From Lepidodermella squamata (taxonomy: Eukaryota > Animalia > Gastrotricha): 64,000 nucleotides of DNA. Every line of letters begins with the position of its first letter. The stretch's first letter is position 1. The notes beneath the pieces are model-generated. The model had not been told where the DNA came from. It did not search any database and saw only the letters and a program-made list of their open reading frames with translations. Shown here piece by piece: positions 14,989 to 57,812 of this stretch. The position numbers and the translations under genes are program-made. The stretch covers positions 1,302,001 to 1,366,000 of the forward strand of contig JBLDXI010000007.1 in NCBI GenBank assembly GCA_047495785.1, read 5' to 3'.

Positions 14989-15372
14989 ATGCAAGCCTTA
15001 GCATTGATTCTGCTCGTCGCCTTACCTGCCGTCTTCACACGCGACCTCAGTGAAGCCTACGATCAGGTTTCGTCAGGGTCTGTATCAGAACAATCGGTCC
15101 AAAACAGTCAATCTGCTGGTGGCTCCCGTGATCTGGACGAATCAACAAAAGACCGGCTGATGAAAGGGCTCGAAGAAACAAGTGATCGAAGCCTTGTGTG
15201 GACGCCATTCGGCGCTACCGAACGGCCCAACTTCCACTGCACCTACCTGAACAACATGCCTGGAACTAGCGTCTGCTGCACGTTCACCTCGCTGTACCTT
15301 GTTCAATGCTACACGCCATCGAATTTCGTCCTACCTTGGTCTCCAGCTGCTGGCGTCGCTTTCGGCAAATAA
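14989..15372 (+). CDS. Small secreted prepropeptide, Cys pattern C-CC-C, C-terminal amidation signal (FGK)
   Basis: Signal peptide MQALALILLVALPAVFT, acidic/Ser-rich pro-region ending at DR, Cys-containing mature part; tttcag acceptor just upstream of the ATG. Confidence 0.7.
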   Translation: MQALALILLVALPAVFTRDLSEAYDQVSSGSVSEQSVQNSQSAGGSRDLDESTKDRLMKGLEETSDRSLVWTPFGATERPNFHCTYLNNMPGTSVCCTFTSLYLVQCYTPSNFVLPWSPAAGVAFGK

Positions 15373-16410
15373 AAGCGATGAAAAATCGGAATTTAAAACA
15401 AAACAGCCGTCTCACACTTGTTCTTTCATCCTCGTGCTTGTTCTATCCATTTTTATACATAATTTCAGTGCATAATGACCAGTTTGTAGCTCAAGGAGAA
15501 TAAAAATAATCAAGTCAATGACCTCCAAGAACCAATTATTTATTCAACTTCGAGAATAGCGTGATAAAAAGAAGACCATTTATAAGTGTCACAGGCTTCC
15601 GAAACGCCACTGTAAGTGTCATCCTTGAATCGAAGAAACTATAAACGAACTAACATTATTGAACCAAGAAAACACGCCGATATCTTCAGCAATTAATTTC
15701 GAAATTTGCAAGGGATAAATCAGTTGGCGTTCAAGCCTCTGAACAACGTTTGAAATTTTGAAATTCGTCATGCCGAATCGAGATTTGGCGAAATTTGACC
15801 TCAATTATGATAAGTGACGCACACAAAAAAGTCAGTCACGTGTCTCATAAATTGTGCGCGATTTATTTTATAATTTTTTTTCCAAACTACCTTCCTCCGT
15901 TAACGATCATCAATTTAAAAATAAATCTACGAGGAAAATCCGCGATTTCACTCATGAATTACGGTAATTTTCGGTAATTTTTGCAATTTTATCCTGGTGC
16001 GCTCCAGAATTTCTCCGGATTTTTTCATTCCGTTTAGTTTTATAATTAATAGTTAATATCAATACATCAATAATTTATCCTGGCCTTGAAATAGGACATT
16101 CCTAATTTGTTATCCTTTTTCTACGAATTTCCTTGGATTTATTAGACATTTATTTATATATTTTAGTGAATTCGTTACTATTCAGCCGAATGATATAGGT
16201 AAAATTGCTAGAAATTATTGATGATGCGAATTTCAAATTAAGAGCTGAAGACAACTTGTTCATTGTTCATTTAGACCACAGAAAAAATAATTCAAATTTC
16301 AGCCTAAATATAATAGTGCGATTTTTCAATTTTAATTGTTTTATAAAACACAAGCTGGATCATTGATTGATCCGAAAATATATCTGGGTGAATTTAAGAG
16401 TTTTGATTAA

Positions 16411-19400
16411 TTAATTTTTCGTTGAAGTTTGAGATGTCGCATCGGCCGGAGCGCGTTCTAGCAGCGCGATAATTTCAACGCGCTTTTTGCGGTTCTCATT
16501 ATTGACCGCCGCATTCTCAGCCATGCGAATCGACGGCCGTTGCGCCAACACGTCACTATTCACAGACAACACACTGCTATTCGGAATATCAATCGCATCG
16601 CCTGTTATCGTAGCCGCATCCGCAGGGTCCATATCGCCTACCAACTCATCGTCCTCGGCCAACAAATTTTTCGCAAGATCCAACGGCGTTATGCCTCGCC
16701 ACTCCTTCGCCATCGTATTCGCGCCATTAGCGATCAAACTTTCAACACTGGCTGGTCTATTGAAATCAACAGCTCGATGAAGCGGAGTTTCCTTGTCGTT
16801 ATCAGTCGCGTTGACCTTCGCGCCCAGCTTAATTAGGAGTTCAATAATATTTCGATCGCCGCTTTCGGCAGCTGCGTGAAGTGGCGTGAGGCCATACGCA
16901 GCCTTTTCATTGACATTTGCCCCATTTTCGACTAGCAATTTGATAATTGCCTCGTGTCGGAACCAGCAAGCGTCGAACAGCGGTGTCGCCTCGGCCTCGT
17001 CGTCTCGTAATTTCAGAATTTGCTTCCCGCCCCGCTCGATGAAGATTCGAGCCACCTCGGTTTGGCCGGCTTCGCATGCCCAGTGAAGCGGGGTTCGGCC
17101 GGATTTTGTTCGGGCTTCCATATCGGCGCCTGATTCGATGAGAAGTTCGACGAGGTGCTTGCTGCCAAGCCCGGCGGCGACGTGAAGCAAAGAACATTCA
17201 CGGTTGTCGTCAACACTCGTTACTTTGACATTAGCGCCTCGTTCTAGGAGCAGCCGACACGCTTCGACTTGGGCCTGAATAATAGGAAAATATTAAAAAA
17301 TAAATCATTGAAATTGCATAAATCAAGGAAATGCAGCTGAGGATTATTATCATGCTTTTATCAAGGTTTGAAAGCTAGAACAGGACTAATTGAATACCTT
17401 CAAGCTTGCCCAGAAAAGTGGCGTTCGTCCATTGATGTCAGGTGCTTCGATACTGGAAGAAAATAAAATAATCAAAAATCGAAATTTAATTAACCGTGGA
17501 CAGAAAGAAAATAAGGAGTTAAGATTGTCCTTTCGAGCCAAGATTGAGTATTCCTTCAAATTGCGAAGAAGGAATCTCCTTCCGATTTTCATCAAGCTTG
17601 CGGCTATTCTCAACATCAGGTTCGATAGTTTTTCACTGAATTTTCAAGTAAATATAGCGGGAGCCAAAATATATTTTTCCATTTTCTGCCGAATTCTCAC
17701 CCTAAATCTGAGGGTCCAGCATTAGACTTTCCCAGCACAACATTTTCCAAGTTTATAGCACTAAAAATCTACTTTTGTTTGTTCGCTGTTAACCAATAAA
17801 CTCCTATTTGGCATTTTTTGCGCTATCGGCGTCCAGTTTGTGAGTTATACTTCAGCCTGCAGAGCCGATATCGATTTCAAGTATCGATTTTACAAATCAG
17901 TGATTTTGCCAATATCAGCAGTCTTGGAAACAATTTTTTATTTGCCTGAAGGTTCCAGATAGTTCAATAAAAATTCCAGGGTCATCGGCTTTATCAATCA
18001 AGCAATAAAAAACTTGAAATCGCTAGAAATCGGGAAATTCAGGACTAAAGTAATTAAATTTAGTGCTGGAACCTTGGAACCTCTTGCAACCTTTAGTATA
18101 TAGATCCCCCTATTTTGAGCTCTGACTAATGCTATGAAATGCAAACATGTTCTCATGTTCTAAATATTTTAATTGTTCAATAATGATATTAAATCGGGAT
18201 TAAGCTTGGCCAAAAAGTCATGATCCGGCCTTATACTGAAAATCAAGCAGAATTTTATGGTAATTTTGTATTTGGATTTTTTCAGAATCAATCATTAAAT
18301 TCCCAAATTGTTTGAAAATGCATTCATGGCGAACAAATTATTTAAAATTTGCTTCAAAGTGAAACAGGCATATTAGCATAATAAAATTTGGATTCACAGG
18401 ATCTATGACTTGAAAGGATGGCTAATTGAATGATAGCAGGAAAGTAAAATTTAGCGCTGAATTTCCAAGTTTCATAAATGTTTCCATCAAACCCCAATTT
18501 TCTATGTTGTAAACAGACCTAAATTTATCTGAATTATTTGTGAAACTTACTTTGCACCACGGTCCAGCAGCAGGCGTATCATGTTAAGGTGGCCCATCGA
18601 CGCCGCAATGTGAAGCGCCGTCTCGCCCCAAGCATCCATCGACTCGCGGTCCCGCTCCACCTTCGCATCAACAATCGCCCCGTGATCGAGCAACAACAAC
18701 GCCACCACATCATTATTATTCTCCGCCGCCCAATGCAGCGGCGTTTTCCCGCTTTTCGTCCTCGAATTAACATTAGCCCCAGATTGTATCAACAACTTGG
18801 CCACATCAACCCGGTCAAAAGCAGCGGCTCGGTGCAACGGCGTCGCGCCATTTCGGTCATCCTTCGCGTTCAACTCGGCGCCATTTTCAATCAAAATACG
18901 AGCCGCGTCAATATCGCCGTACTTTGCCGCGATATGCAACGGCGTTTGGCCCAATTTATTGCGGCCGTTGCAGTTGGCCTTGGCGACTTGAAGCAGGTAT
19001 CGAACTATGACAACGTGGCCCAGTGTAACAGCGGCTGTCAACGGCGTGCTCAATTCCTCATTCTCCGCGCCCTCAACACTCACCTCGACGTTAGCACCTC
19101 TTTCTACGAGTAGTTGTAACATGCCTAATTGACAACTATGACAGGCTCGGTATAACGGCGTTTCTTTCGATGACGACGTAGTCGCCTCTAAATTCGCCCC
19201 GCAGTCGATGAGGCAGGCGGCTAGATCGACCCGGCCTGATTCGGCAACTCGGTGAAGTGCCGTCATTTTTTGACCCGGTTCCGCCTCCGGTACCAACTCG
19301 GAACCTATTGCCTCCTCAAGATCGACCCCCTGCGATTTTAAAACCTCGCGTAATCTGGCGAGATCCCCATTTTCTAGGGCTTTAGCTAAATCCCCAGGCT

Positions 19401-22262
19401 GGTATTTCGGGATGACAGGTTTAGGTGGAGCTGGCGGGTTGATTTTACTCGCGACTGGTTTTCCAATAGGGGCTTTGGCCTGGCCGTTCAGGGGTTTCGC
19501 AGCTGGCGCCGGGGCCGCTTTACCAGGCGGTGGTCGCGCCCCAGGTTTCGCCCCGGCTGTTTTCGGGGGTGGGCCTGGCTTAGCTGGGCCCGAGGCGGCT
19601 GGTGGTGGTGGGGCTGGTTCCGGCTCGGGAGGGGTTGGTAGATTCGACTGCTCGCTATCGATTTCGAAAATCGGCTTTTCGATCGCGATTGAAAATTTGT
19701 TCGAATAGCTACTCGATGGCCTGTTCAGCGATCTGCTATCCTCAGCCTCGATAGATAAGGACGGGGTTGATCTTCCAGCAGAACCGGCATCTTCTTCGCG
19801 CCTAATTTTCTGGAAAGAGGAAAAAACGAAATTAAGATCGAGATTAAGAAGGAAAATTAAATTAAATTCTAAAATTATAGAAAGGTTAGACTTTCAAAGA
19901 GGGCTGATCTTTTCCCCCATCGAACCTCGCGCAGGAATTTAGAAAATAATTTGAAACGATATACAGCGAGTCCCAGAAGTTGCGTAACAATTTTTAATTT
20001 GACAACTTTCTTTAGGAAATTTACCTAATGTTTTAAAAATTAAACCTAGCACAAGAATATTATGTATTTAATCTTTTATCCGACATCTGAACGAAGAAAA
20101 TAAAAACTTTACCGGAGAAAACCCGGAAAATCCCGATGGTAACTGGTTCGGTAATTTTCGGTATTTTACCCGGAAGGACCAAATTTCCCCGGACTTTTCA
20201 CTCCAATTGACAAATGACATAAGGATATATTTTCGTGATTTTTTCAATTCTTCTAAACATTTTTCGCCATGAGAAGGGTCTTCGTCTATCAATTTAGAGT
20301 TTCTGAACCCTTTTCCGAGTATTTTCTTTGCTAGCGTTATTAATGGGACACGCTGTAAATATTTGAGCAGAATTGTAATAAAATCACGGTTATGCTTGGA
20401 TGAGAAAATATTCTTCAAATCACTCGTTAGAGATTCAAAAGTTTTGGAAATTTTAGGAAAAAATATAAGAAGAAAAATACAGCCTTTCGATAGACAGTTC
20501 TGAATTTCATAGCTCACCATTAACAAGACCATTAGTCTAACTTTTTTCCTGTTCCGCTAAAATTTAGCGATATTTATCAATCGGTCGGGGGGAAATTAGG
20601 ACTCACCTTTCCTTTGTCAATGCTCATCGCTTTCGGTCGTTGTATCACGGCGATTTTCAAGGCTAGCATAGGGTGCTCGCTCAACTGAAGCGCGGTTGGT
20701 CTATCCCCAGGATTTTTACTCAGCATCATCCTAACCAGGTTTCGTAAGTCCTCGCTATAGGAATTTTCGTTGATAGGCGTTGGGTCGCCGTTTGTGATCA
20801 AGTCTCCGATATTTCCGAAGCATAATTCAATATCGCCGAATGCGAACTCCATTCTGGTGCATAAATGATGGATTAGACACCCTAGCGCCCAGATGTCGCT
20901 TTCAGACGAAAATTGGCCGGTTGGGACAGGTAAGGGCTGCATTGATTCCGCCTTGGGCTCAGCCCCAGCCGATGCTTCAGCTGAATCTGGGTTGGTCTCT
21001 TCGTTAATATCTGGCAGTGTTGTTGGGGCTCGAACTGCGATTGATCGCCACAGTTCCGGGGCCATGTAGATTGAACTGGGCGATATCGGGCTGGGTGGCA
21101 GCATGGTTCTAGCCGAGCAAAGGCCGATGCTCCCAAGGCGAACAGACAGGGTGTTATCACTAACCTGACCAATAAATAAGGTATATACATTTTTTGCACA
21201 CTAAAATTGAGGTTCCAGCAATAAATAAATTATTAAAATTCAGTGTCTAGATTTTTCCTGTTTACTGCAAATTCAATTTTTTTCTTGATTGATAACAATG
21301 CCCCCAGATTTTTAATTTAGCTACCTGGTAAAATGAGAAAAAAATAAAATTCAGCATCCAATACTGCTGATATCGAAAAAATCACTGATTTTTAAAATCG
21401 ATACTTGAAATCGATATCGGCTCTGAACGCTGAAGTAAAACTGGTAAAATTATCGCAAATAGCGGAAATTACACGTAATAGTGAGATTTATTGGTTGGGC
21501 AAGATTATAAAAGAATAAGATTCTGAAAAACATGAAAAATATCAAAAATCATATATCGAAAAAATCAAGGAGTGGAGCTTCAAATTTATTGCTGGAACCT
21601 TAAATTCAGGATGTCCACTACTTGGCATATCCCAATAATCAAATAATTATGATTTTAATTTAAATATGATACCTCTAAATTTCTCCCGCCGCCTGAAGTG
21701 TGGCGAACTAGGACATTTTCGACGCAAAGTTCGCCGTGGTAAAGAGCTCGCTCGTGATGAATATATTTCAAAGCTAGAACGAGCTGGCCGAAAATATCGA
21801 GAACTTTCTCCTCGCTCAGCTGCTCTTTAGCTGGAAGATCTTTCAACGTCCCGCCATCGCAATAATCCTCCACCACACAAATTCGACCATCATCTAATAA
21901 AATAACCAGTAAATTACTGAAAAATAAAAAAATTACCGTGACTCACCTTCAAAAGCATCGAGAACTTTAACGCACTGGGGATGCTTGATCGTTCGAACAA
22001 TATCGATCTGAAAATTATTTTTTAATGAATTTTTGAGACGGAAAATTTGTCAACTTACAAAAGCCTGCCGTTCTTGTTCACCAACTCCGCTGGAATTGAC
22101 GCCTTTAAGGACAACAAGCCGTTTGTTCCGAGTTTGTTTATTCCGCACCAAAGATCGACGTTCGTCCAAGGCCTGGGGTTCGGATAAAATGAAATGACCC
22201 AATTATATTTAATTTAATAAAAAAAAGCCCACCTTAACGAGCTCAAATCTGTCGATTGTCAT
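16411..22262 (-). CDS. NEK-like pseudokinase + Pro-rich linker + multiple ankyrin repeats (8 exons)
   Basis: Exons ~22262-22233, 22172-22059, ~22007-21947, ~21893-21673, ~21164-20607, 19810-18551, ~17452-17398, ~17274-16411 splice in frame; kinase motifs VVLK, IKHPQCV, EDYCDGG, YMAPE, SDIWALG, RPTA; ankyrin TPLH repeats in ORFs 18547..19296 and 16411..17190. Confidence 0.8.
17711..18074. mobile_element. Intronic MITE, copy 1
   Basis: Ends agggtccagca / tgctggaacct; core gagccgatatcgatttcaagtatcgatttt matches the reverse complement of 21210-21600. Confidence 0.6.
19964..20355. mobile_element. Tc1/mariner-type MITE in intron
   Basis: TA|cagcgagtccca ... tgggacacgctg|TA. Confidence 0.6.
21210..21600. 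mobile_element. Intronic MITE, copy 2 (inverted relative to copy 1)
   Basis: TIRs aggttccagcaataaat / atttattgctggaacct. Confidence 0.65.
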
Positions 22263-24610: not shown

Positions 24611-26053
24611 ATGACTGTAGCATGCTCGTCGATAACCAGCAACAAAAACTGCCCATGGTTAGCCACCGACAAAATCTGCAGCGTCGTCGAAGAAATTCTA
24701 CCTCACCTCGGCGTTAATTTTACCGAAGCTAGAATAACCGGAAAAAATATGTCAAAAATCGTCAAAGGAAACCAACCGTACCGAGAGGACGCCCCGCGAC
24801 TAGCCACGCAATTCTCCCTACCCGGCGGCCATTCTTCAGCTGTTACCGTGGAGCTAGCCGGGCTGGATCCTGAGAGCTACAACAAATTATTAGCCCTAGA
24901 TTCTGCTGGTTTGTTAAGCAAAGTTTCGTCGATTTTGTTGACCGAAGTTTCAGACGCCTACTCGCCAGCTGTTCACCTCCTGCTATCCTGCTGCACGCAT
25001 CTCGGTGATACCAAAGTTATCAGTTACGTTCTCGATAAAATCGGCGGTCTAGTGCCGAAATGCGCCCTGCAATCGCTGCTATGGCGATCGATAGCTAGCT
25101 GTTGCGCCGAGTCAGTGTCCGCCTTCCTGAACCACGGTGCTCAAGTTACGGACGTCGCGTCGTGCAAAGCCCTGGAAAAGACCGTCATCGCCAACTTCAT
25201 CGCCTGTAAACAAAGCCTCATGTTACGGACCATGCGTGACGGGCAATGGAACGCGTTTTCCGCGTCAAATCGCCTCAAAATCTGCGACGTCCTGCGAATG
25301 CTAGTTCAAGAGCCGAGGTACACGCTCCGCCGGCCGGCTAATGTTTTCCGGTTGAACGACGAGCTGCTCGGCAATATCTGCCAGTTGTCCTTCTTCGGCC
25401 CGGATGCGGTTAACCCGGTTCTTAACGCAGATCGAGCTTTCCTAAACTACCGAGAATCGACGCTACAGTCAATTCTCACCGGTGAAACTTCCTGCCGTAG
25501 CTCGTACTCGAATTTTTTAGTCGATTTCGAGCGTTTTAGCAAGTCTTTACTCGCAAATCATCGTGTAGATAATAGTACGTTTCAAAGTCAAGTTATCGGG
25601 CGGTTCCTAGTTTTTGGCATGTTGCCATTGTTACGCTCCGGTGCGGTTGTCGACGCGAAAAGCCTCAGTGACTGGCACTTGAAATTCGATTTCGGCAACA
25701 TGGGCTGTGAGATGAATGCGCGCCTATGGGGCCGTAATTTAATTCACATCGACATGCTGTTATCGTCAATTAGCTATGACATGGCCCGGTGTGTCCGGCT
25801 ACCTACGCTGCGCAGCGACGATAGTGAGGTGTTTCGCAGGGTGATTGCGGCGAAATTTCCGTTTTCGCTGCAGGTCACCGCGAGACGGGCGATTCTGGCG
25901 AGACTGCCGCTCGGCCTCGCGGCTCGTCGCCATGCAATCGGCGACTTGCCACTACCCGGTGTTTTGAAAAACTATCTAGATTTTTGTGAATTTGAGCCGC
26001 TAATCAATACCAGTGATTTTCTACTACGCGACTCGCCCGAATCACCTTCTTGA
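24611..26053 (+). CDS. Intronless SOCS-box protein with degenerate ankyrin-like repeats (ASB-like)
   Basis: C-terminal PFSLQVTARRAILARL...IGDLPLPGVLKNYL is a SOCS box (BC + cullin box); ESVSAFLNHGAQV and LLRSGAVVD are ankyrin-like. Confidence 0.7.
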   Translation: MTVACSSITSNKNCPWLATDKICSVVEEILPHLGVNFTEARITGKNMSKIVKGNQPYREDAPRLATQFSLPGGHSSAVTVELAGLDPESYNKLLALDSAGLLSKVSSILLTEVSDAYSPAVHLLLSCCTHLGDTKVISYVLDKIGGLVPKCALQSLLWRSIASCCAESVSAFLNHGAQVTDVASCKALEKTVIANFIACKQSLMLRTMRDGQWNAFSASNRLKICDVLRMLVQEPRYTLRRPANVFRLNDELLGNICQLSFFGPDAVNPVLNADRAFLNYRESTLQSILTGETSCRSSYSNFLVDFERFSKSLLANHRVDNSTFQSQVIGRFLVFGMLPLLRSGAVVDAKSLSDWHLKFDFGNMGCEMNARLWGRNLIHIDMLLSSISYDMARCVRLPTLRSDDSEVFRRVIAAKFPFSLQVTARRAILARLPLGLAARRHAIGDLPLPGVLKNYLDFCEFEPLINTSDFLLRDSPESPS

Positions 26054-34702: not shown

Positions 34703-37700
34703 CTAAGAACTCGTCCTCTCATCTATCAGTGACTCACTTGTCGACGGGTTGTAGCTTGTTCCCGACGAACATTCGAACGGTCGGCAGAAGCGTTCATCCG
34801 ACTCGTCGCCGCAATCGTCAATGCCGTTACAAATAGCTCGGAGACCTATGCATCGGCCGGTATTGCAACGGCGTTGACTGAACTGGTCACACCAGTTGTT
34901 GCCTCTTGGTCGCGATCCTCCCTGCCCAGGACAAGGTTTGCGAATGTCGACACAAGTATTGGTAGTGTTACACTTGTACATTCCGGAATCGCATGGACGG
35001 TAAACGCAGCCCTCTTCGTCAGACCCGTCGTCGCAATCGGGAGTTCCGTCACACATACTGTCGGACCAAATGCATTTGCCATCAGAGCACTTGAAGCTTG
35101 AAACAAAATTGACAAATTAAACGTATTACCTACAACTGATTCTAATTTTACAAGGAACAAAGAAATTCAAATTATATTCAAATATGATCAACTGACTGAA
35201 AAAATGGAAAATGAATTAGATAACAACCAGTTGTCACAGCATGGTCGATTACTGCAGCGTTGCTCATCGCTTCTGTCGGGGCAGTTGTTACTGCCGTCGC
35301 AGAACTTGTCTCCTAAAATGCAACGCCCATCACCTTGACAAGACTGCCCGCTCGGTCCGCAACCCAGACAGCGCCTCTCGTCGGTTCCATCGCCGCATTG
35401 ATCTACGCCATCGCACGCCCAGTCGCGGTAAATACAGCGCCCATTGTCGCACTTCGAACTAAACAGAAACAGATGAAATACGATTCGTTGAAAAGCCTTC
35501 TCACCAAATCTCGCAACAAGTCAGGTTGTTGCCCTGTCGACAGTTCGTCTCATCGTCAGCATCAGGACAATCGACTTTCTTATCGCAAACCTTCTGTCCG
35601 TCAATGCATTCGCCGGAAATAGGACATTTCCATTGATAATTAGCACAGCCAGTAAATCTGGGCGGCGAGATTGTTGTGGTTGATGAAGGTTCCGGGGTAT
35701 TGCGAGAGCCACATGACGACATGTCCATTAGCCAATTCATATCACTCTGGCAAATGGCAACTGCCGTCATTTCGACCGCTGCACTCGGCCATCCAGTGGT
35801 TCTCGGACACAAAAACTGAACAACTGAACCGACTTTGTTGCCATTCGACACTCTACCAACGGTGAAATTGCCGATTTGACTCAATGGTCGACATTCCGGT
35901 TGCGATTCTAACTTGACTCTGGCTTCATCAGTCTGTTTAACAAAAGCTGCGTGTTCATTGAGCGTGGAAGTTGCCAAGGCTGAATCGCCACCTGAGGCAA
36001 GGTAGTCGAAAATACACTGACGGGAAGTTCCACAAACTGCCCGTGCTTCTGCTGGAGCCGATTCGGGCCGAGCGTCGAAGTAAACAGGCTTGAAGTCTGG
36101 AAAGCGCATTGATTGAAACGACTGCCCTGAAGAATAACTGAATAGGCTCTGTTCGGGTGATCGGATCAACCATTTCATCATTTGATCATGAATTTGTTCA
36201 GCTGGTGAATTCGAAGCTAGAGTTGATCCATCCGGGCCAGTTAGATCATCGGCCAGGTTGTCATTGAAGTTCCCGTAAAGACCTGCAAACTTACCCTTGA
36301 AAACATCGCTAACTGCCGGTATCATTGTCAGCGTGCTAAAAGCTTTTTTGACAACGAGACTCATCGCCCTAGTAGCGATGGTGACGATGTGCCTATCAGG
36401 TGTAGCTGTCAGCGAGAATCCTGGCATACTAACCTGCAATGCGCTGTTCGACACCGCATTTGTTACTATTGATGTGCCGTTGATCAAAATATCCAGCCCA
36501 TTTTTCGTGGGATGTTGCTGAATTTGTATCCTTGTCGGTGAAGTGGAGCTCGGAATCTTGACAACCATCGCTGTCAGGTAGCTGGCTTGCCCCGATCCAG
36601 TCAAACGACCTTGAACAATTGGAAGCGACTTATTGACACCCTGCTTAGGTACGATCATGTTGAACTCCCCTCTCCCGTTGAATACGTAATACAGGCCGTC
36701 AAATGTGTTGAAATGAGGATCTCCAAAAACTGTTGCGGATTTCGGATCCGGACAAAGAGCGCATGCTACTTGGCAAGCGATAGCCGTGATGGGATTTAGA
36801 ATGGCGCATACAATTGGACAGAGAGCACAGAGGCATCGTTTTTGAGAACCAACATCGTAGAAATTGAAAAGATAATCTCTCGTTTCAGTGAATAGAGCGC
36901 CACTGGTCGTTTGCATCATCAAAATCCAATCGCTCATCGGCAAGCCGCAAACATCGGGCGAACTTTGAGTGTAACAATTGGAATGGCTGTCCAAGGCAGC
37001 TTGTTTCACTTGTTTGCATGACAGATTCGGGTCCAGCAGTGGCGTTGCAGCTTGTTGGAGACAGAGCCTTACGCTGTCAACCCATTGCTTACCGTCGTCG
37101 CTGAAAGAATCGTAATTTTCAGCATATTTGTTACAAAACCGCAACGCATAGGCCCTCGCATAGTCGTCTTCGCCACCACGGCAGGAAGGATGAGCCGGTT
37201 CAAGGCAGGTTTCATACCAAGAGCAGTCAATTCCTGTCGGTCGATTGCAGTTTGTTGCTTGGCGTTTTTGCCGACTCGGGTAACGATTTCTGTACGGGTT
37301 GCAAGCTTCTTCCGAGCAGATTGAAACTGATGGAGGATCCTGAGAATCTCCATCAACTGTTGCGAATCTGCAAGAACCTTTTCCGCAGAAAATTGGCCGG
37401 CTTAGCATTAAACCAATATCATTTCTTGCCAGAAGGCTCTCAACGTCCACTCCTGACCTGCCACTCCTGTAGCCAATGACCATCAGAAGCATTCCACCAA
37501 GTTCACCAGCATTGAAAGCTGGATTTGCTTTCAAATAGTACTTTTTCGACAACCTATCATTCGGAACAGCCCGAGCTAAATCTGTTAGAACGCTCCATGA
37601 ACTTGATGTGTCGCTCAAATAGATCAGGCTGACGTCGATTAGAGCCGAAGTGTCTCGAAAAGATTGGTTTGACCACTCCACTCGAAGAGCTACAATGGGC

Positions 37701-38872
37701 GAGTTGAGCTCACCGTTTCGAGCCACAAATTTGGCAGCAATTGTTGAAGATTCTTCATTATAGACTGTTTCGACAAATCCATTAAATATTGTCCCGTTCA
37801 AGCCTAGAGACAAGTTGACAGATATCCTTCCAATATCATGAAGAACCGGAACTTGGCATCGAACTGTAGGGACGCCTGCCAGCATGACGGCAGTTCCATT
37901 TACTCGGCGTGGGCCGCGCAGACTGTCCTGGAAGATGCACTGGGCAACTTCCGAATTAATGTCGAATAAAGGACCAGTTACATTGATTTCACTCCCTCCA
38001 AAAATGCTGACTCTTCTTGGACTAATCGAAACTGAATTCATTTGAGCAACGATCGAATTTGCTGTATCGGTTCTGAAGATCCACTTTCCTGGCTGGAAGA
38101 CGTTTGAAGAAGCTTCGGCTCCTCGAATTGTTCCAGTGCACGATCCCGGTACGGCGTAGAATGTCTTCCCATCGCCAGCATCAAATCCGATTTTAGCCGG
38201 CTTTCCGCTCAAACCCGTACAATACTCGCCACCACTTGCTGTACCTGTTGTCCAGGTAATTTTTTCAAAATTGAAAATAGCAAACATGCTGTTTCCGCCA
38301 TCTGTTGCTATAACTGCTTGAAATGTGTTTCGTGGGATTAAGGGACTGGAAGCGTTGTTGTTGAACATTCCGCAATTACCTGCTCCGTAATAAGTCACAT
38401 TCCACCACGTTACTATGAACAAAGCCATTGATTTGAAACTGGTCCCGTTGGATAGGCCAGCTGAATTGATTTCTCGATCAGCTTTTGCCAGCAGCCTACT
38501 CTCATTTGTCAGTCGATAGTAAACATTACCACCAAGATATCTGGTATCGACATCGGCCCAGAAAGGAGCAATCATTCGAATGCCAGCCCCATTGGCTTGA
38601 CAAAGAGGCGTGTAAGCCGAAATGCCAGCGTCGAAAGAGATGGCTCCGTTGACGTTGACGTAGAATCGGCCCTCCTTCCTGCCCAAGAATGGAAACAGCG
38701 GAGTGACATTGATGGCAGCTGATGAACTGTCATCGCCGCTTTCTAATAAGCGATCGCCATTGGTGTTACCGAAAGGAAAGAATTCACTAATTGAAACCCC
38801 AGCGGTAACGTTCGATATCCCAAATAACAGAAGTAGAAGACCACTACCGACCTGTATCGCTGCTACAAGCAT
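34703..38872 (-). CDS. Secreted NIDO + IPT-like + stanniocalcin-like + VWD + Sushi + LDLa repeat protein (SUSD2/mesh/MUC4-like), 3 exons
   Basis: NIDO ([26 protein letters not shown]), [17 protein letters not shown] module, ~5-6 LDLa repeats; exons ~38872-35505, ~35458-35228, ~35094-34703; no TM segment seen. Confidence 0.85.
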
Positions 38873-51821: not shown

Positions 51822-52745
51822 TAATGCCCGAAACACAAGTTTAGGATCCCCCATGGTTGGTTATTTTCCAGAGAAAAACCCATTTTCCACTCGAAATCTG
51901 GGTAAAATGCCTAAACACTCTCACCCATGGTGTCTAATTGAATTAATTTTGTTGGAATAAAAAAAATCAACCTTAACAAAGCGTGTGAGAGAAGAAAGCA
52001 AACACAAGGCGAGTTCTATTATTACCACAATTTACGCTATAATATAATTATTGGGTATTTCAGTTAGTCAGTTTCTATTTTATCGTTTGGCTAATTTTTA
52101 ATTTTTGCTGAAATACTTTTTTGCGCTAAATACCGTAGTCCAGTACAGCTTTGAACAGGTAAACGTTTGAACATTTCACGCAAATCAGCTTTTCTCTGAA
52201 ACCATAGGGATCTACCGCTTGGGAATTTTACTGAATATAGGTATCGTCGTGATCGATCATTTTGCTAAGTTTCATCGCCATTGTTCCCTTAAAAATTCAA
52301 AATTCAAAAATTCAAAATTCAAAATTCCATTTGAATGATTTCTCGGAAATGTGATCTTGCCTCTTGGTAGTTTTTATTTGGCGAAGCGATGAATCAGCAG
52401 CAGATAATTAGCTGTACCAAATAATAACGTATCCGGTGATGGACGTCTGCCTGTTATACTTTCTTATATGGTGTCATTCATAAACCACGCAGACAGTCAT
52501 GCGTATCGAATCTTGCGACAAATAGCACTGTTATCGCTGGCAAATTAGCTCGCGATGAGTGGACTGCGATATTTTAAGGTGGTTTCCACGCGTAAGCACG
52601 ACACTCATAGTTAATAGTTAATACTGATTAGTTTTCCACGGACTTGGATAATATTTATTTTCTACTGTGAACAATATTTCAATCAGCTCTTGAATAATAA
52701 TTGAATCATATAGCAGTATGAGTATAGCAGCTCAAATTGTAAGCA

Positions 52746-55700
52746 CTATGTAGTTCTTGTAACTATATTTTGTGTACTTGTTGAATGCGACTGTACAACA
52801 GCTCTGCAGGTTGGACAACTGTCCTTCTCTCTCAGCCAGCGGTTGATGCAGTCCATATGGTAAACTAGAAAAACATCGAAATAAGGATGAGGTGGAGAAA
52901 TTCGAATTTACCATGCCCACAAATCAATCGTCTCGAACTGCAACCGAGTTTCACGACGTCCAAGTAGCAAATCACGCACTGAGACTTCTCATCATTTATA
53001 TTTTCTTTATCCACTTTAAGGAAGAAACAAAACATGAAAAAGTGTTCAGCAAAATGAAACCAACACTTACTATTTCCTCCAGTATGCAAGAGTTCCTTCG
53101 AAGCAGTGTATAACTTCTCAGCCAGTAAAAAGAAGTACCTCTCAGATTTATCGGATCGGGTAAAAATTTCAGCTTCGGTTTGAACAGCAAACTTGCGCAA
53201 AGCCTCCAGGTCACTGTAGCCGCCGCTTTTCACTCTTAATTCTTCTGTAAATTTATCAATAGCAGCCTGCCTAGCTTCAATGCCGAACTCTTTCTGCCAG
53301 GTTGACGCATTAGCTTGAATGGGAATGACGGTGCCAGAATGAACTCCAGGGATATTATCACTCGTTGTTTTTCGCAAAACTTTCGAGTCGAAAACAGGCT
53401 TCGACAAAAGACTCAGCATCCGAACCTCCTTACACACCGGACACTCCTCGTCCCTGCATTTCTGCCAATGTAAAATTATTTGCCGCGTTGACAAGCAGCT
53501 TTTGTCTAAAATCGATTCAGGTAATATTCGAAATTAGATACAAAACTTGAACTTACAGGTGCAAGACTTATCATCCTTGCAGCCTCTCAGGTGGTTTATC
53601 ACATCTTTCATTCGTTGACAATAAGCGACTTTACAGTCCGGAAAAGTCGGGTTAATTGCAGCGCCAGCAACACTTGTTGCTATCAACCTTGCAATAGCAT
53701 CTCGTTTTTCACACTTATGAGCATGCAAAATCAGGATCAACTGATTTTGAATCCCGATCCTTTTCTCCTCGCTTAGTCCTTGATTCCTGTTATTCTGAAA
53801 CCGCAGAAGATTGTTGAAGATTGCGCTTCTTCAGACGAAATTGAAGGCTTACCGGCGTAACGGTTGAGCTAGAAGAGACTGCTAATATTTGCTTTGGCAG
53901 AGAAGAGATCGTTGAGCTTTCAAAAGAATCGCTTTTCTTGTCACAACCTTCAAAATCGCAAATTAAATTAATTAAAAAGAATGGTTTCATGACTTACCAT
54001 TCATTTCGTTTCTTGAGCATTCAGCGGAGCATTCCAAGGCTTCTTTTACTTGATCGACTAAAATGTCGGTAGAAAGAATATGATGAGCTGACGGCCTCAA
54101 TGCAGGGTCATCATTGAGCATAGATTGGATTTGATTGCGAAGATCTGAACTGTAAATCTCAGGTATGGACCTATTCTTCCATCTGAATCATAAGAAATAT
54201 AGCATTCGTTTCAAAAATATAGATCGGGTACATGTGCTCATGCAATATTTTTTGATACAGGACTCGTAAATCGTTTATATCTGAACTCGCCGTACTCGAT
54301 TTACTCATCTCCACTCGTCTTCGACTCGTTCCGATTCGTAAATCTCGGCCGGCTCCGTTCAGATATAGACTCTTTACTCGTGCTATATAAGACAAATATG
54401 AATGTTATAGAGCATGATTCATTTTATATCTGCGAACCTTGCTATCGCCATTTCGTAAGTTTCGCCCAATTCTACTGTGAAAGCTGGGGATTTTAAGCTA
54501 GCCAATTCGAATAACGTTACTCCCAGAGACCATATGTCGGATTTTCCTGAGAAGCTCTGATTTCTAAATAGCTCCGGGGCGACGTAAACTGCTTCTTCTT
54601 TTTCGAGATTCGGAAGTGACTCCAAGCTATAGCAACATGACAAAATTAGTTACATTATTCAAGCGAAGTTTGATTCCTAACCATTTCCGTTTTGTCAGCC
54701 CAAAGTCGCCGAGTTTCAAAGTGCCATTACCAGTGATAAAAATATTCTGCAAAACATGCACGAGTTATAGCAGGGCGTACGTAAAATGATAAGATCAATT
54801 CATACCGAGGGTCGTATATCCCTGTGAACGATTCCAAGATCATGAAGAAATCTAATTGCTATCAAAAGCTGAGCCGCCCATCTCCTAATTGTATTTTCTG
54901 AGATGAGTTCTTTCGATTGAGCCAAAAAAGACGAAAGATCCGAGCCTGTGCGAAATTATAAGAGTTTATAACTGCTAGTCAGGTCACTCATCAAAAAGCG
55001 ATGTTGAAGATTTATCAGCAACTTCAGTGTCAACGTGCTCCAAATCTCAGGAATGTCTTGCTAAACGTCGTTCGGACTCGGTCAGACCCGAAAAAGATGA
55101 CACAGGACACATGTGTGATAACAATCTTTGCCCCAGAAAATAGATTCATCGCTAATCCCATTATGTTACGTTCACAAACTGCTTCGGAGATGCGTCCGAA
55201 GTTTTAGCCTCCGAAGTTGCGTAATCGCTGACCGAAGTTTTAGATTTTCGTTCACAAACGCGCGCACTTCGGACTGCGCGCCCGAAGTGAGAACAATGGG
55301 CGGCGCGCACGCACTGAACAAAGGACAAGCACAAACTTCGGTTCGGAGAGGCCCACAACTGCTCTCCGAAGCGCCTCCGAACCAAAGTTTGTGCGTGTCC
55401 GAAGTTACTACGTACGAACGCGCGCGCGGCCACTTGACCGCGCGAGGTAGGGCGACGACATAAATTAACTGTTCCTGTGGCATCTTTAATTCGTATTATT
55501 GACTATAATTGACGAAAATGACGTAGATTTCAAGTATATGAAACGCGCGCAGTAAAATCCTTGTTTTCACAAAAAAATGTCAATATTATAGAAATTATCG
55601 GGTGCCCTTAAAAATAGCTTATAGTGCGCGTTGAAAAAAATTCAATTTAATTTTTGATTTATTCTGAAAAATGGTGAATTTCGCGTCGAAATTTAGCTTT

Positions 55701-57377
55701 TTGTTATTGTCGTCGCATTTCGCATCTTATTATTTAGGAATTTTGAGAATTCAAGTGAAAGTGAAAAAATTTGTGTCTACCCTGCGGCCCCTTCTCTAGT
55801 TTGAGCGCGCTCGCACTCGTGGGCGCGCACTCGAAATCTTCGGCCCGCAAACAATAGAAACTTCGACTCTATTGTTTGCGCGCGGAAATTGCCACTGACA
55901 ACGTCACCGAAGTTTCGCTTGAGTGTTCCGAAGTTTCAAGTTCGGTCTCCGAAGTCACCCTCTCCGAAGTTAGTTTGTGGACGCACCATTACATCTTCCC
56001 CGGCATTGCCAAACCTCTGACCCCAACTCAGCCGACGACTGTGGCATAGAAAACGAAGCAAGCGAAGATCAGACCAAAGTTGTTCTAGTCATTGCTGTAG
56101 TTCGAGCTCGCCCACCTCAACGGCTACGCCGATGCTAGACGCGACCTGGGTAACCTTCGCCGCGACTCGTTGTTTGGGTCACGGCTCTCGGTCGAATGAA
56201 GGCTTCTTGTTCGCCTTGACACGCCGAAAATGAGCTCACGATTCAATAGGTTGTGAGCTTCATTTCAAAAAGCTCCAAAAGGTATGTTTGCCTTGAAATT
56301 CCCCCAACATTGGTCAGCCACGATTATCTGCAAATGAAGGCTGCGGTACCAACCAGCTCGGGGACCAAGAATCGCTCCGGAATTGCCTTGGTTGGGTCGA
56401 CGTCCATCGAAAAAGCCATTCACTTGGCGACTTTCACTAGGAAATGCCTCAACAGCCAAGCGCCAGCATTGATGTGGAACATGTTTCAGCGGCATATAGG
56501 GCAGGCACACAAGAAGACCATGTTCCGAATGCAAAGCATATAACTCCTTCGTGAGTAATTCAGGTTCGGTAACTCGCCGAAAGCACCGGTACCTAATCTT
56601 TCCGAAGCCCTCCTAATCTTTCCGAACGGCACCCAGCGATTACCCAGACTTTGGAGCACATTTTTGCCAGACCTGTGCCACGCCTCCGAGATCGTTGCTG
56701 GTTCCTGGGCTGTTTCAGCGCTGTTCGCTTTGCCGCAAGTGTGCTCTGTCGCTCGGAAAGCAGTCAATGGTAGACGACGACGAGCCGTTTTCGTCAAGGC
56801 AGAACACTCAGACGCGATGGAACCGATGAATACTGAGTAGGCGACCGGGGAAGGCTTTCGAGCTAACTCAATGCGTCAGAGCCGAAGGTGGATGAGCAAA
56901 GCCGTCAAATATTTCTTAATAGGTCTTGATTTTGAGTACATTCTTGAACACGTTGACTTTCAAGCTGCTTATCCAACATCATAAATTGTCATACTAGCCG
57001 CCTACCAATGCCGTAGCTTTCAATAACAACAGTAGTGTACGAATCTGCTGTTTTCGCTACACAGAGAACTTGAACCATGAATGGAGTAGGAGTAGATTTC
57101 AGCAGTTGATACTATGGAGATTGTAGATAATATTTTGCAAATAATACGTCACTTGCATGCAGTTCTCAGTTACCTCTCTAATCGTTTCAGCTGGTTCTTT
57201 CCCGTCATGAGCGGCAATCAAAGCTTTTTTCGTGGGTTGTGTTTCATTGCATTTGCGGCAAAACGTTTTTACAAGCTGTAGAAAACATGAACGGTGAATT
57301 GAATTGAAGGGAAAGTGCCTTCTTACATCATCCATAATGCCAGCTCGGCCGTTTTTGACAGAGCCTGAGAAATTCAT
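52746..57377 (-). CDS. Chimeric NEK-like Ser/Thr kinase - TAZ1 zinc finger - KIX - RING-H2 protein (12 exons)
   Basis: Exons 57377-57327, 57275-57174, 57111-57006, 54945-54806, 54746-~54682, ~54627-54438, 54170-53998, 53947-~53853, ~53794-53557, ~53505-53071, ~53013-52912, ~52864-52746 join with consistent phase. Motifs: HRDIRPSN, KLGDFG, YVAPE, SDIWSLG; EEKRIGIQNQLILILHAHKC..HLRGC..RQIILHWQKC..CPVC; RYFFLLAEKLYTASKEL; CVIC..CGHVYHMDC..W..CPTCR. The three 5' exons are less certain. Confidence 0.75.
55164..55988. mobile_element. MITE with 3-bp TTA TSD (PIF/Harbinger-like) in the large intron
   Basis: TTA|tgttacgttcacaaactgcttcggaga ... tctccgaagttagtttgtggacgcacca|TTA; many ccgaagt/acttcgg subrepeats. 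Confidence 0.65.
55992..56700 (+). mobile_element. Decayed CR1/L2-like LINE RT C-terminal fragment
   Basis: Remnants RDLG(V)TF and IEKAIHLATFTRKCLNSQAPALMWNMF resemble the L2/CR1 3' ORF; multiple frameshifts. Confidence 0.4.
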
Positions 57378-57812
57378 TGATTCGCAAGAATAAGATCGGT
57401 TTGAGCAGATTGCACTAGAGGCTTGGTTGTAGAGCTAAAATTAGAAAATTATAAATTCAGCGGTGATGAAAAGTAAACTTGGTAGGAAGCTTTTATAGGA
57501 AATAGTGACTAAATCTCACTTTCGGCCCACCCCCGCCTTTAGCGTAGGATAGGCGTTCAATCTCAGTTGTTCAAGATCTTAGTGCGAACAACAGCTAATA
57601 TTTTGAATCATCGCTGCATTTTTTGCATGGTGGTGATTCATAATTTCACCAAGATTCAAGATTATTTATTATCTCAAAGGTTATATATCTTTTCGCAGTA
57701 TGATTCATAAAGGGCAATTCACAAACTCGTGTTTCATGATTCATGATTCATTTTTCATTGCGCAAAATTCATCTCTTGCAAAAAACGGTCGCAGAGCCAT
57801 TTGAATCATGAA

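What the first reader, a model, noticed from the sequence alone, without database searches (positions are those of the whole stretch)
52746..57377. Kinase-TAZ1-KIX-RING-H2 chimera: CBP/p300 activator-binding modules fused to a kinase and an E3 ligase
Seen: scattered short ORFs splice with consistent GT-AG phases into one frame encoding a NEK-like kinase (HRD, DFG and APE intact; N-lobe degenerate, with no GxGxxG and no clear VAIK), then a TAZ finger, a KIX-like helix bundle and a complete RING-H2. Known: the TAZ resembles CBP TAZ1 (EKRKLIQQQLVLLLHAHKC), the KIX resembles CBP EYYHLLAEKIYKIQKEL, they are in CBP order, and they bind transactivation domains (HIF1a/STAT2; pCREB/Myb); CBP carries bromo and HAT domains, not a kinase or RING-H2. 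Inference: exon shuffling made a decoy that captures CBP clients and phosphorylates or ubiquitinates them, reversing coactivator logic. I know of no described protein with this architecture.
Basis: partly seen in the sequence, partly recalled or inferred. Interest (0 to 1): 0.9.

Follow-up and report, generated by a model that had tools for sequence, protein, structure and literature searches.

The report
Pseudokinase-TAZ1-KIX-RING ubiquitin ligase gene
An expressed gene of an unidentified invertebrate joins a degenerate protein-kinase domain and copies of the two transcription-factor docking domains of the coactivator CBP/p300 (TAZ1 and KIX) to a ubiquitin-ligase RING finger. This design is described in no paper I could find, and it would let a ligase choose targets by their activation domains.

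Summary
A 12-exon minus-strand gene (57377-52746, all introns GT-AG) encodes 608 aa. In order it has a ULK/NEK-like kinase fold, a CBP-type TAZ1 finger, a KIX domain and a RING-H2. The kinase fold lacks the glycine loop and the beta3 lysine.

Contigs of an RNA-like public run carry 8 of the 11 splice joints, and loose ends fit the other 3. A DNA run shows none of these joints. The exons that join kinase to TAZ are among those seen spliced.

Pfam, PDB sequence searches and an AlphaFold model with Foldseek support each domain.

The TAZ-KIX-RING part belongs to a tiny unannotated family: five clusters of single-exon genes on metagenomic animal contigs, none with a kinase. No kinase-fused relative appeared among 1.84 billion representative proteins. 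Differences from a second, about 90% alike, expressed copy are mostly synonymous.

Most likely this is a RING E3 ligase that recruits clients through TAZ1 and KIX, with the pseudokinase as a regulatory or scaffold module. That function is inferred, not shown.

The scan noted the same family before on other DNA of this genome (s1-373954, s1-393976, s1-395126, s1-368326 and others).

Verdict: a new variant of a known kind, interest about 0.63.

The parts
52746..57377 (-). Whole coding region, 12 exons, 608 codons plus TAG. Exons: 57377-57327, 57275-57174, 57111-57006, 54945-54806, 54746-54682, 54626-54438, 54182-53998, 53947-53853, 53794-53557, 53505-53071, 53013-52912, 52864-52746.
   Evidence: GT-AG at all 11 introns and one open frame. 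Splice joints and loose ends in run X1.
54071..57275 (-). Protein-kinase fold, residues about 18-255 (exons 2-7). HRD is at 54826-54818, DFG at 54707-54699 and APE at 54580-54572. Ala38 stands at the beta3-lysine position (57215-57213). There is no GxGxxG.
   Evidence: Pfam Pkinase on exon pieces. PDB phmmer best hits ULK4, ULK2, ULK1, then NEK7. Motif positions.
53771..54070 (-). Linker, residues 256-319, including the Ser-rich exon 8. It joins kinase to TAZ.
   Evidence: Joints 53998>53947 and 53853>53794 are present in X1 contigs. No Pfam hit.
53423..53770 (-). TAZ1-type zinc finger, residues 320-418, split by intron 9. The three HX3C..C..C sites are H335/C339/C365/C370, H379/C383/C389/C394 and H403/C407/C412/C415. 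It has a 13-residue insertion relative to p300 TAZ1.
   Evidence: Pfam zf-TAZ 35.6 + 16 bits. p300/CBP TAZ1 E 3e-10 with alignment. C-terminal third matches CBP TAZ1. Ligand positions.
53081..53302 (-). KIX domain, residues 459-532. Tyr523 and Lys527 lie in the columns of CBP Tyr658 and Lys662.
   Evidence: Pfam KIX_2 30.4 bits. AlphaFold model with block pLDDT 75-92 over KIX. The Foldseek list is led by CBP/p300 KIX, TMt 0.71-0.80, with RECQL5 KIX rows interleaved at lower TM-scores. Alignment with true CBP/p300 KIX.
52806..52978 (-). RING-H2 finger, residues 548-589, split by intron 11. Ligands are C548, C551, C567, H569, H572, C575, C586 and C589. Ile550, Trp579 and Pro587 are present, and Arg590 follows the last Cys.
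   Evidence: Pfam zf-RING_2 50.1 bits and zf-rbx1 40.9 bits on the spliced 50-mer. Pattern match. The same residues are invariant in the family alignment.
57490..57497 (-). TATAAAAG box about 115 nt upstream of the ATG. An X1 contig covers the 5' UTR up to 57426 without a further joint. In-frame stops lie upstream of the ATG.
52654..52659 (-). AATAAA signal 87 nt after the stop codon.
54946..57005 (-). Intron 3 (2060 nt), swollen by a repeat bounded by imperfect inverted repeats (55005-55040 and 56946-56981). Part of it (55085-56038) has high depth in the DNA run X2.
54183..54437 (-). Intron 6 (255 nt). It holds a MITE-like inverted repeat (54239-54286 and 54357-54404) whose summed contig depth in DNA run X2 is about 100 times that of the flanks.

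Best explanation
The locus is one expressed gene for a 608-aa modular protein.

Shown:
- Its C-terminal half is a member of a small, unannotated family of TAZ1-KIX-RING-H2 proteins derived from the N-terminal docking region of CBP/p300.
- Its N-terminal half is a ULK/NEK-like kinase fold. That fold has lost the glycine loop and the beta3 lysine but keeps HRD, the catalytic Asn, DFG and APE.

Inferred mechanism:
- The RING-H2 binds a UBE2D-type E2~ubiquitin.
- TAZ1 and KIX act as substrate receptors for amphipathic activation domains. These would be proteins of the kind that dock on CBP/p300, possibly phospho-dependent at KIX.
- Bound transcription factors would then be ubiquitinated instead of being coupled to acetylation.
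- The kinase domain most likely acts as a pseudokinase: a regulatory switch, scaffold or extra binding surface, not a conventional phosphotransferase.
- The modules are separated by flexible linkers.
For: Gene and transcript:
- 12 exons, GT-AG throughout and one frame.
- X1 contigs carry 8 joints, and loose ends match the other 3. The two joints linking the last kinase exon, the linker exon and the TAZ exon are among those seen. DNA run X2 shows none of these intron joints.
- Of 28 changed codons listed between this copy and variant contigs, 17 are synonymous (binomial p 3e-4 against 28% expected).

Domains:
- Pfam hits.
- TAZ1 E 3e-10 with all 12 zinc ligands.
- KIX fold: block pLDDT 75-92, CBP KIX TMt up to 0.80.
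- RING-H2 at 50 bits with all 8 ligands.

Ligase competence (from established RING biology):
- The E2-contact Ile, Trp and Pro and the Arg after the last Cys are present. They are invariant in the family.
- The RING of the family model matches the active E3s RNF165/Ark2C, RNF12, RNF38 and Arkadia in complex with UbcH5~Ub (TMt up to 0.81, 41% identity).

Receptor competence:
- The KIX alpha3 motif keeps the Tyr and Lys that contact pSer133 of CREB in CBP (alignment; residue roles are from my knowledge of the KIX-pKID structure).

Family:
- Collinear alignment with five standalone clusters.
- Clade support 100/99 against CBP-type TAZ-KIX.
- dN/dS 0.31 between two standalone members.

Precedent for the logic:
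- Plant BTB-TAZ proteins drive ubiquitination of transcription factors (PMC7468283, from its title and abstract as listed; the paper was not read).
- A fish p300-like protein joins TAZ and KIX to a SOCS box.

Pseudokinase reading:
- No GxGxxG, Ala38 at the beta3-Lys position, and HRDIRPSN instead of HRDLKPxN.
- The best match of the APE exon is the pseudokinase ULK4.
Against: - No biochemical, localisation or interaction data exist. E3 activity and client binding are inferred from residues and folds.
- X1 is only guessed to be RNA by its record, although its joints argue for cDNA.
- Contigs of about 180-360 nt cannot prove one molecule from exon 1 to exon 12.
- The exon 3-4 joint is seen only through a roughly 90% alike copy. 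One exact-match contig runs 52 nt past the exon 3 donor into the intron.
- By the alignment and my recalled CBP numbering, the positions of Leu599 and Leu603 on KIX alpha1 are alanines, and TAZ1 carries a 13-residue insertion. Client specificity may therefore differ from CBP's.
- The kinase keeps every C-lobe catalytic residue. An atypical active kinase (lysine supplied from elsewhere, as in WNK) is not excluded.
- The N-lobe exons give no Pfam hit on their own.
- The organism is unidentified. Whether it also has a normal CBP could not be checked.
Confidence: 0.5

Rival explanations
1. Immune decoy ligase. TAZ1 and KIX are baits that mimic CBP/p300 surfaces hijacked by viral proteins. The RING tags the captured viral protein, or signals, in the manner of TRIM-type restriction factors or plant integrated decoys. 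The pseudokinase transmits or gates the signal.
For: - The family is lineage-restricted and its members are strongly diverged from each other (27-39% identity between branches).
- The scan's unchecked notes report several copies in this genome.
- A stand-alone TAZ of exactly this family (58% identical to the window's TAZ, inside the family clade at 100/99) sits on an ORF-dense contig with a protein-primed B-family polymerase. That contig is probably a polinton-like or viral element, and it also encodes a related RING-H2.
- From my knowledge, CBP TAZ and KIX are classical targets of viral proteins.
Against: - Pairwise comparisons show purifying rather than diversifying selection.
- No virus-host pairing is known.
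- The IMG/VR scan with the family profile found nothing.
- The viral nature of contig L003 rests on one polymerase hit and on gene density.
Confidence: 0.15
2. Competitive decoy without ligase function. The protein simply titrates activation domains away from CBP/p300, as a dominant-negative mini-CBP. The RING serves self-turnover or dimerisation only.
For: - Short TAZ-KIX proteins without HAT or RING exist in other animals, for example Rotaria sordida proteins of 221-508 aa (most 251-278) and an Aphidius 301-aa protein. Truncated docking modules are therefore viable products.
- TAZ and KIX are the best-conserved parts.
Against: - The RING ligands and all E2-contact residues are invariant across the family.
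- The RING exons carry mostly synonymous change. This is unexpected for a dispensable module.
Confidence: 0.12
3. Active kinase-ligase. The kinase is catalytically competent in a non-canonical way. It phosphorylates clients docked on TAZ and KIX, for example creating or destroying a phosphodegron, before RING-mediated ubiquitination.
For: - HRD Asp129, Asn134, DFG Asp147, APE and an activation loop of normal length are intact.
- Two kinase exons pass the Pfam cut-off on their own.
- From my knowledge, kinase plus RING or PHD-type ligase in one chain has precedents (MEKK1, plant KEG).
Against: - There is no glycine loop, Ala stands at the beta3-Lys position, and the catalytic-loop Lys is Arg.
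- The protein starts only about 17 residues before the first recognisable strand. A TATA box and upstream in-frame stops argue against a missing 5' exon.
- Variant codons in the kinase part are about half non-synonymous (7 of 15), against 4 of 13 in the TAZ-KIX-RING part.
Confidence: 0.12
4. Artefact: two neighbouring genes (a kinase remnant and a TAZ-KIX-RING gene), or a decaying pseudogene, joined only on paper.
For: - Standalone family members start just before the TAZ.
- Depth over exons 1-3 in X1 is lower than over later exons.
- Contigs cannot prove a single molecule.
Against: - X1 joints connect the last kinase exon to the linker exon and the linker exon to the TAZ exon, in frame with no stop.
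- No exon in the linker region opens with a start codon in a suitable context.
- The frame is intact over 608 codons, with an excess of synonymous change.
Confidence: 0.04

Closest known systems
CBP/p300 N-terminal region (TAZ1/CH1 followed by KIX)
   Same: - Same two domains in the same order, with collinear alignment across the end of TAZ1, the linker and KIX.
- All zinc ligands are present.
- The KIX alpha3 motif is kept, with the Tyr and Lys equivalents of Tyr658 and Lys662.
- Folds match solved CBP/p300 TAZ1 and KIX.
   Different: - No bromodomain, HAT, ZZ, TAZ2 or IBiD. There is a true RING-H2 instead of CBP's atypical RING.
- A kinase fold sits at the N-terminus.
- TAZ1 has a 13-residue insertion, and the KIX alpha1-alpha2 loop is shortened.
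- It forms a separate clade from CBP-type TAZ-KIX.
Unnamed TAZ-KIX-RING-H2 family (P0001, P0002, P0006, P0050, P0051; metagenomic animal contigs)
   Same: Homologous over TAZ, KIX and RING, with the same spacing and 32-37% identity. Clade support is 100/99.
   Different: - Those genes are 242-320 aa, single-exon, and start about 25 residues before the TAZ in most members (up to about 60 in P0002).
- No kinase lies within about 4 kb upstream in L001 and L002.
- The window gene has four introns in this part and a fused kinase fold.
Plant BT proteins (BTB-BACK-TAZ), reported as CUL3 substrate adaptors
   Same: A TAZ finger is coupled to ubiquitin-ligase machinery and used against transcription factors, for example MdBT2 with MdMYB73 (PMC7468283; listing, title and abstract only).
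   Different: - The ligase is recruited through BTB rather than carried as a RING in the same chain.
- There is no KIX and no kinase.
- Plant TAZ is of independent descent.
RING-H2 E3 ligases of the Arkadia / RNF165 (Ark2C) / RNF12 / RNF38 type
   Same: C3H2C3 finger with the Ile, Trp and Pro E2 contacts and the Arg after the last Cys. These are the best structural matches of the family RING, several solved with UbcH5~Ub.
   Different: The substrate-binding parts are unrelated. The match is to the catalytic finger only.
ULK4 (pseudokinase), ULK1/2 and NEK7
   Same: These are the best solved-structure matches of the HRD and APE exons. As I recall it, ULK4 also lacks the beta3 lysine.
   Different: - Matches are short (38-54 residues, 29-35 bits), so family membership is not established.
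- The window protein keeps DFG and HRD.
Teleost 'p300-like' TAZ-KIX-SOCS box protein (Myripristis murdjan XP_029933398.1, P0007)
   Same: CBP-type TAZ and KIX are joined to a module that recruits a cullin ligase (SOCS box, 33.7 bits). This looks like an independent case of the same logic.
   Different: - Its TAZ and KIX are almost identical to true p300.
- It has three KIX-like stretches and a SOCS box rather than a RING.
- It has no kinase, and it falls on the CBP side of the tree.

Membership tests
Protein kinase superfamily (Pfam PF00069) | Profile match above the gathering score | tested here: met
   Two single exons score 32.6 and 34.5 bits against a cut-off of 31.7. Two more score 15.8 and 13 bits.
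Protein kinase superfamily (catalytically competent members) | Glycine-rich loop GxGxxG | tested here: not met
   There is no G.G..G anywhere in the kinase part, only GRAG at residues 10-13.
Protein kinase superfamily (catalytically competent members) | Beta3 lysine (VAIK) | tested here: not met
   About 92 residues before the HRD Asp, the sequence is ALIAAH with Ala38 at the lysine position. The assignment is by spacing and reading, not by a structural alignment.
Protein kinase superfamily (catalytically competent members) | HRD Asp, catalytic Asn, DFG Asp, APE | tested here: met
   HRD 127-129, Asn134, DFG 147-149 and APE 171-173. The catalytic-loop Lys is Arg (HRDIRPSN).
ULK or NEK kinase family | Best and consistent similarity over the whole domain | tested here: inconclusive
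   Only exon-sized pieces could be searched. ULK4, ULK2 and ULK1 come first and NEK7 second, at 29-35 bits. The C-terminal kinase exon has no PDB hit.
TAZ zinc finger (PF02135), TAZ1 type | Profile match, and closer to TAZ1 than to TAZ2 | tested here: met
   35.6 bits on the first exon alone (cut-off 25) plus 16 bits on the next. p300/CBP TAZ1 E 3e-10 to 2e-9 against TAZ2 5e-3 or worse.
TAZ zinc finger | Three HCCC zinc sites | tested here: met
   H335/C339/C365/C370, H379/C383/C389/C394 and H403/C407/C412/C415.
KIX domain | Profile match above the gathering score | tested here: inconclusive
   KIX_2 (PF16987) scores 30.4 against 25.6, which passes. KIX (PF02172) scores 18.1 against 27, which does not.
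KIX domain | Three-helix-bundle KIX fold | tested here: met
   AlphaFold model of the window's own exon 10, block pLDDT 75-92 over KIX. Foldseek matches (probability up to 1.00) are CBP/p300 KIX (TMt 0.71-0.80, rmsd 2.0-4.0 A), then RECQL5 and Gal11 KIX. All E-values are weak, 0.075 or above, as expected for an 80-residue domain.
KIX domain (CBP type, pKID site) | Tyr658 and Lys662 equivalents on helix alpha3 | tested here: met
   Tyr523 and Lys527 fall in those columns of the alignment with true p300-like KIX. The role of these residues is from my knowledge of the KIX-pKID structure.
RING-H2 E3 ligase | C3H2C3 ligand pattern and profile match | tested here: met
   C548, C551, C567, H569, H572, C575, C586 and C589. 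zf-RING_2 50.1 bits and zf-rbx1 40.9 bits.
RING-H2 E3 ligase | E2-contact Ile, Trp and Pro, and a basic residue after the last Cys | tested here: met
   Ile550, Trp579, Pro587 and Arg590 are present. The same residues are invariant in the family alignment. Their role is from established RING-E2 structures.
RING-H2 E3 ligase | Ubiquitin transfer with an E2 | not testable with these tools
   This needs an in vitro ubiquitination assay.
CBP/p300 acetyltransferases | Bromodomain, CBP-type RING/PHD and HAT_KAT11 core | tested here: not met
   No such hit on any exon. The protein ends 19 residues after the RING. It is not a CBP, only a derivative of CBP's docking region.
TAZ-KIX-RING family (unnamed) | Collinear homology over all three domains and common descent | tested here: met
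   tblastn 32-35% identity over residues 305-603 to four loci. Alignment. Clade support 100/99.

The most novel reading that the evidence does not exclude
The gene belongs to a lineage-specific, multi-copy family of 'activation-domain reader' ubiquitin ligases that act in a host-virus or host-mobile-element conflict. Copies of CBP's TAZ1 and KIX surfaces would serve as baits for proteins that hijack CBP, a RING would provide the output, and in this branch a pseudokinase would act as the switch. Family-type TAZ and RING genes would be traded with polinton-like elements.
Probability: 0.12. Interest if true: 0.85.

Novelty: new variant of a known kind. Interest (0 to 1): 0.63.

Why it matters
TAZ1 and KIX are the surfaces through which many transcription factors, and many viral proteins, engage CBP/p300. 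A natural protein that wires those same surfaces to a RING ligase would be an evolved degrader of activation-domain-bearing proteins. It would run counter to the coactivator, and it would be a ready-made tool or template for targeted degradation of transcription factors.

Three lines suggest that coupling CBP-type docking modules to ubiquitin ligases has arisen several times and has gone undescribed in animals:
- The family is absent from annotated proteomes.
- A fish protein joins TAZ and KIX to a SOCS box.
- Plant proteins join BTB to TAZ.

The fused pseudokinase adds a testable case of a kinase fold reused as a regulatory module of an E3.

Tried and rejected
- **First acceptor for exon 7 (54149).** I replaced it with 54182 after the X1 joint.
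- **ESM Atlas feature searches.** The 209-aa ORF gave no usable hit. The 62-aa kinase exon gave only generic kinase clusters.
- **Locus scans with profile A3.** The IMG/VR scan found no relative. The JGI metagenome scan found only six distant TAZ or TAZ-KIX loci without RING or kinase.
- **Rfam on the window.** Nothing was found.
- **Identifying the organism.** The 1123-aa NIDO-VWD ORF matched many animal phyla at only 28-48% identity. The taxon stays 'unidentified invertebrate'. Accession strings of the metagenome samples occur in no relevant paper.
- **Literature searches for the architecture.** Four searches found no description.
- **Whole-protein analyses.** I could therefore not run a whole-kinase-domain search, a whole-protein Pfam scan, a whole-protein fold or a length-matched homologue search. 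All domain evidence is per exon, plus one typed 50-mer for the RING.
- **KIX on contig L003.** I looked for a KIX next to the TAZ on L003 and found none.

Full report
**Observation and gene model**

The minus strand between 57377 and 52746 holds many short ORFs with recognisable kinase, TAZ, KIX and RING sequence. I read the sequence and assembled the pieces in a script. This gives a 12-exon model with GT-AG at all 11 introns, consistent phases and one open frame of 608 codons ending in TAG. Nine introns are 47-62 nt. Intron 6 is 255 nt and intron 3 is 2060 nt.

A TATAAAAG box lies at 57497-57490. In-frame stops precede the first ATG, and an AATAAA follows the stop codon by 87 nt.

**Transcript evidence**

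One search for public runs returned two holders, and both were laid on 52700-57450.

- **Run X1** has contigs with joints whose skipped parts end in CT..AC on the plus strand, which is GT..AG on the gene's strand. These joints lie at the model's introns 1, 2, 5, 6, 7, 8, 9 and 11.
- **Loose ends of X1 contigs** at the borders of introns 4 and 10 match the neighbouring exon 17/17 and 14/14. Those at intron 3 match the end of exon 3 at 27/30, so they come from a diverged copy.
- **Run X2** is DNA. It has none of these intron joints, and it shows very high depth over two intronic repeats.

X1's record only guesses it to be RNA, but its joints argue that it holds spliced cDNA. The two joints that tie the last kinase exon to the linker exon and the linker exon to the TAZ exon are among those seen.

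X1 also corrected my model: the acceptor of exon 7 is 54182, not 54149.

Limits of this evidence:
- Contigs of a few hundred bases cannot prove one molecule.
- The exon 3-4 joint of this exact copy was not among the joints listed.
- One exact-match contig runs 52 nt beyond the exon 3 donor.

**Second copy and selection**

X1 and X2 both hold contigs about 90% alike to the window, besides exact ones. These may be a paralogue, a diverged haplotype or another strain.

Of the differences listed, 28 changed codons fall in the coding sequence. Seventeen are synonymous and 11 are not. This is far more synonymous change than the roughly 28% expected without constraint (p 3e-4). The excess is stronger in the TAZ-KIX-RING part (9 synonymous against 4) than in the kinase part (8 against 7). 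Only 40 of 130 differences were shown, so this is a rough measure.

**Domains**

- **Kinase.** Four exons hit Pfam Pkinase (32.6, 15.8, 34.5 and 13 bits). HRD, Asn134, DFG and APE are intact. There is no GxGxxG, the beta3-lysine position judged by spacing from HRD is Ala38, and the catalytic loop reads HRDIRPSN. The N-lobe exons give no Pfam hit alone. The best solved-structure matches are ULK2 and ULK1 for the HRD exon and the pseudokinase ULK4 for the APE exon, with NEK7 next.
- **TAZ.** It scores 35.6 + 16 bits and E 3e-10 to p300/CBP TAZ1, against 5e-3 for TAZ2. It has a 13-residue insertion and all twelve ligands.
- **KIX.** KIX_2 scores 30.4 bits, which passes its cut-off. KIX scores 18.1 bits, which does not. 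An AlphaFold model of the window's own exon 10 has block pLDDT 75-92 over the KIX part. Its Foldseek matches are led by CBP and p300 KIX (TMt 0.71-0.80), with RECQL5 KIX rows interleaved at lower TM-scores and Gal11 KIX below.
- **RING-H2.** The spliced 50-mer scores 50.1 bits. It has eight ligands, the Ile/Trp/Pro E2 contacts and an Arg after the last Cys.

**Relatives**

A search of 1.84 billion representative proteins with the 209-aa ORF found 32 proteins. That ORF holds the end of TAZ, KIX and the start of the RING. None of the 20 hits scanned with Pfam contains a kinase.

The top three hits are 305-314-aa proteins with TAZ, KIX and RING-H2. A profile search of 5.8 billion clusters added only two more such clusters, plus one 97-aa TAZ. 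All are unnamed and come from metagenome or Logan contigs.

Their contigs are animal DNA, with neighbours such as ligand-gated channel fragments and a fibrinogen/PAN protein. The genes are single-exon. No kinase lies within about 4 kb upstream in L001 and L002.

The window protein aligns with them across all three domains. It groups with them at 100/99 support, apart from CBP-type TAZ-KIX proteins (midpoint root only). Two members give dN/dS 0.31.

An AlphaFold model of one member shows three folded modules separated by low-confidence linkers. Their matches are p300/CBP TAZ1 (TMt up to 0.81), CBP KIX, and the RING-H2 of RNF165, RNF12, RNF38 and Arkadia, several of them solved with UbcH5~Ub.

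**Earlier notes of the scan**

On other pieces of this same genome, the scan has notes on more kinase-TAZ-KIX-RING and TAZ-KIX-RING loci. One follow-up called transcripts untested. I could not read those loci. The diverged expressed copy seen in X1 is consistent with at least one further kinase-bearing copy.

**Interpretation**

The anatomy is that of a modular RING E3. It has a catalytically equipped RING-H2 at the C-terminus, preceded by two well-known docking domains for amphipathic activation domains. These are joined by flexible linkers, and a kinase fold at the N-terminus has lost its ATP-binding hallmarks.

The most economical mechanism is that TAZ1 and KIX recruit activation-domain-bearing proteins for ubiquitination, with the pseudokinase as a regulatory or scaffold module. 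Everything from 'recruits' onward is inference.

Two precedents exist for the logic:
- Plant BTB-TAZ proteins mediate ubiquitination of transcription factors (PMC7468283, seen by title and abstract only).
- A fish p300-like protein joins TAZ and KIX to a SOCS box.

I found no paper describing TAZ-KIX-RING or the kinase fusion.

Rival readings are a virus-directed decoy ligase, a pure competitive decoy, an atypically active kinase-ligase, and an annotation artefact. Each is weighed in its own section.

**Taxon**

The window is animal DNA. It also encodes a NIDO-VWD protein, a class C GPCR, ankyrin proteins, a PHM-like monooxygenase and a SOCS-box protein. The best matches of the NIDO-VWD ORF are only 28-48% identical and are spread over many phyla. 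The organism is therefore not close to any annotated genome in the collection.

**Verdict**

The architecture is not in the databases I could search.

This is a new variant of a known kind: a RING E3 with a new pair of substrate receptors and a fused pseudokinase.

Noticed in passing
L003:4903-5196, 7804-8697, 10138-13005 (Logan SRR24297604 contig 102942): This ORF-dense, mostly one-stranded contig carries a protein-primed B-family DNA polymerase (DNA_pol_B_2, 45 bits). It also encodes a stand-alone 97-aa TAZ finger that is 58% identical to the window's TAZ and falls inside the TAZ-KIX-RING clade (100/99), plus a RING-H2 protein related to the family RING (hhalign 96%). It is probably a polinton-like or viral element carrying family-type modules.
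   Followed up: partly
P0007 (XP_029933398.1, Myripristis murdjan 'p300-like', 550 aa): This fish protein has TAZ, three KIX-like stretches and a C-terminal SOCS box (33.7 bits, cut-off 23.5). It looks like an independent fusion of CBP docking modules to a cullin-ligase recruiting module. I found no paper on it.
   Followed up: partly
P0009 cluster (Rotaria sordida), P0022 (Aphidius gifuensis), P0010, P0011: Short 'mini-CBP' proteins with only TAZ and KIX (221-508 aa) occur in a bdelloid rotifer, a wasp and metagenomes. The named ones are annotated as histone acetyltransferases although they lack the HAT domain.
   Followed up: no
window 54239-54404 (intron 6): A MITE-like inverted repeat (48-nt arms, 71% complementary) whose summed contig depth in DNA run X2 is 10,000-18,000, against about 100-500 in the flanks. 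It is a high-copy element of this genome.
   Followed up: partly
window 55005-56981 (intron 3): An insertion of about 2 kb bounded by imperfect 36-nt inverted repeats. It has a GC-rich inner part with repeated CTTCGG-type motifs and a 26-nt hairpin (55323-55400), and depth is raised in X2 over 55085-56038. It is probably a decayed DNA transposon.
   Followed up: partly
window 52700-54950, runs X1 and X2: A second copy about 90% alike is present in both runs and is spliced at the same junctions in X1. It differs in the linker exon and in the last codons and 3' UTR (loose end at 52771). Whether it is an allele, a paralogue or another strain is not resolved.
   Followed up: partly
window 20625-20912 (-), ORFs 20068-21104: Another protein-kinase gene fragment, 36% identical to residues 180-267 of the fusion's kinase.
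   Followed up: no
window 24611-26053 (+): A 480-aa ORF whose only Pfam hit is a C-terminal SOCS box (30.6 bits). The rest is unassigned.
   Followed up: no
window 35501-38872 (-): A 1123-aa single-exon ORF with NIDO, VWD, mucin-4-type C8-3 and LDL-receptor class A domains (SUSD2/mesh-like). Its best matches, at 28-48% identity, are spread over many animal phyla.
   Followed up: partly
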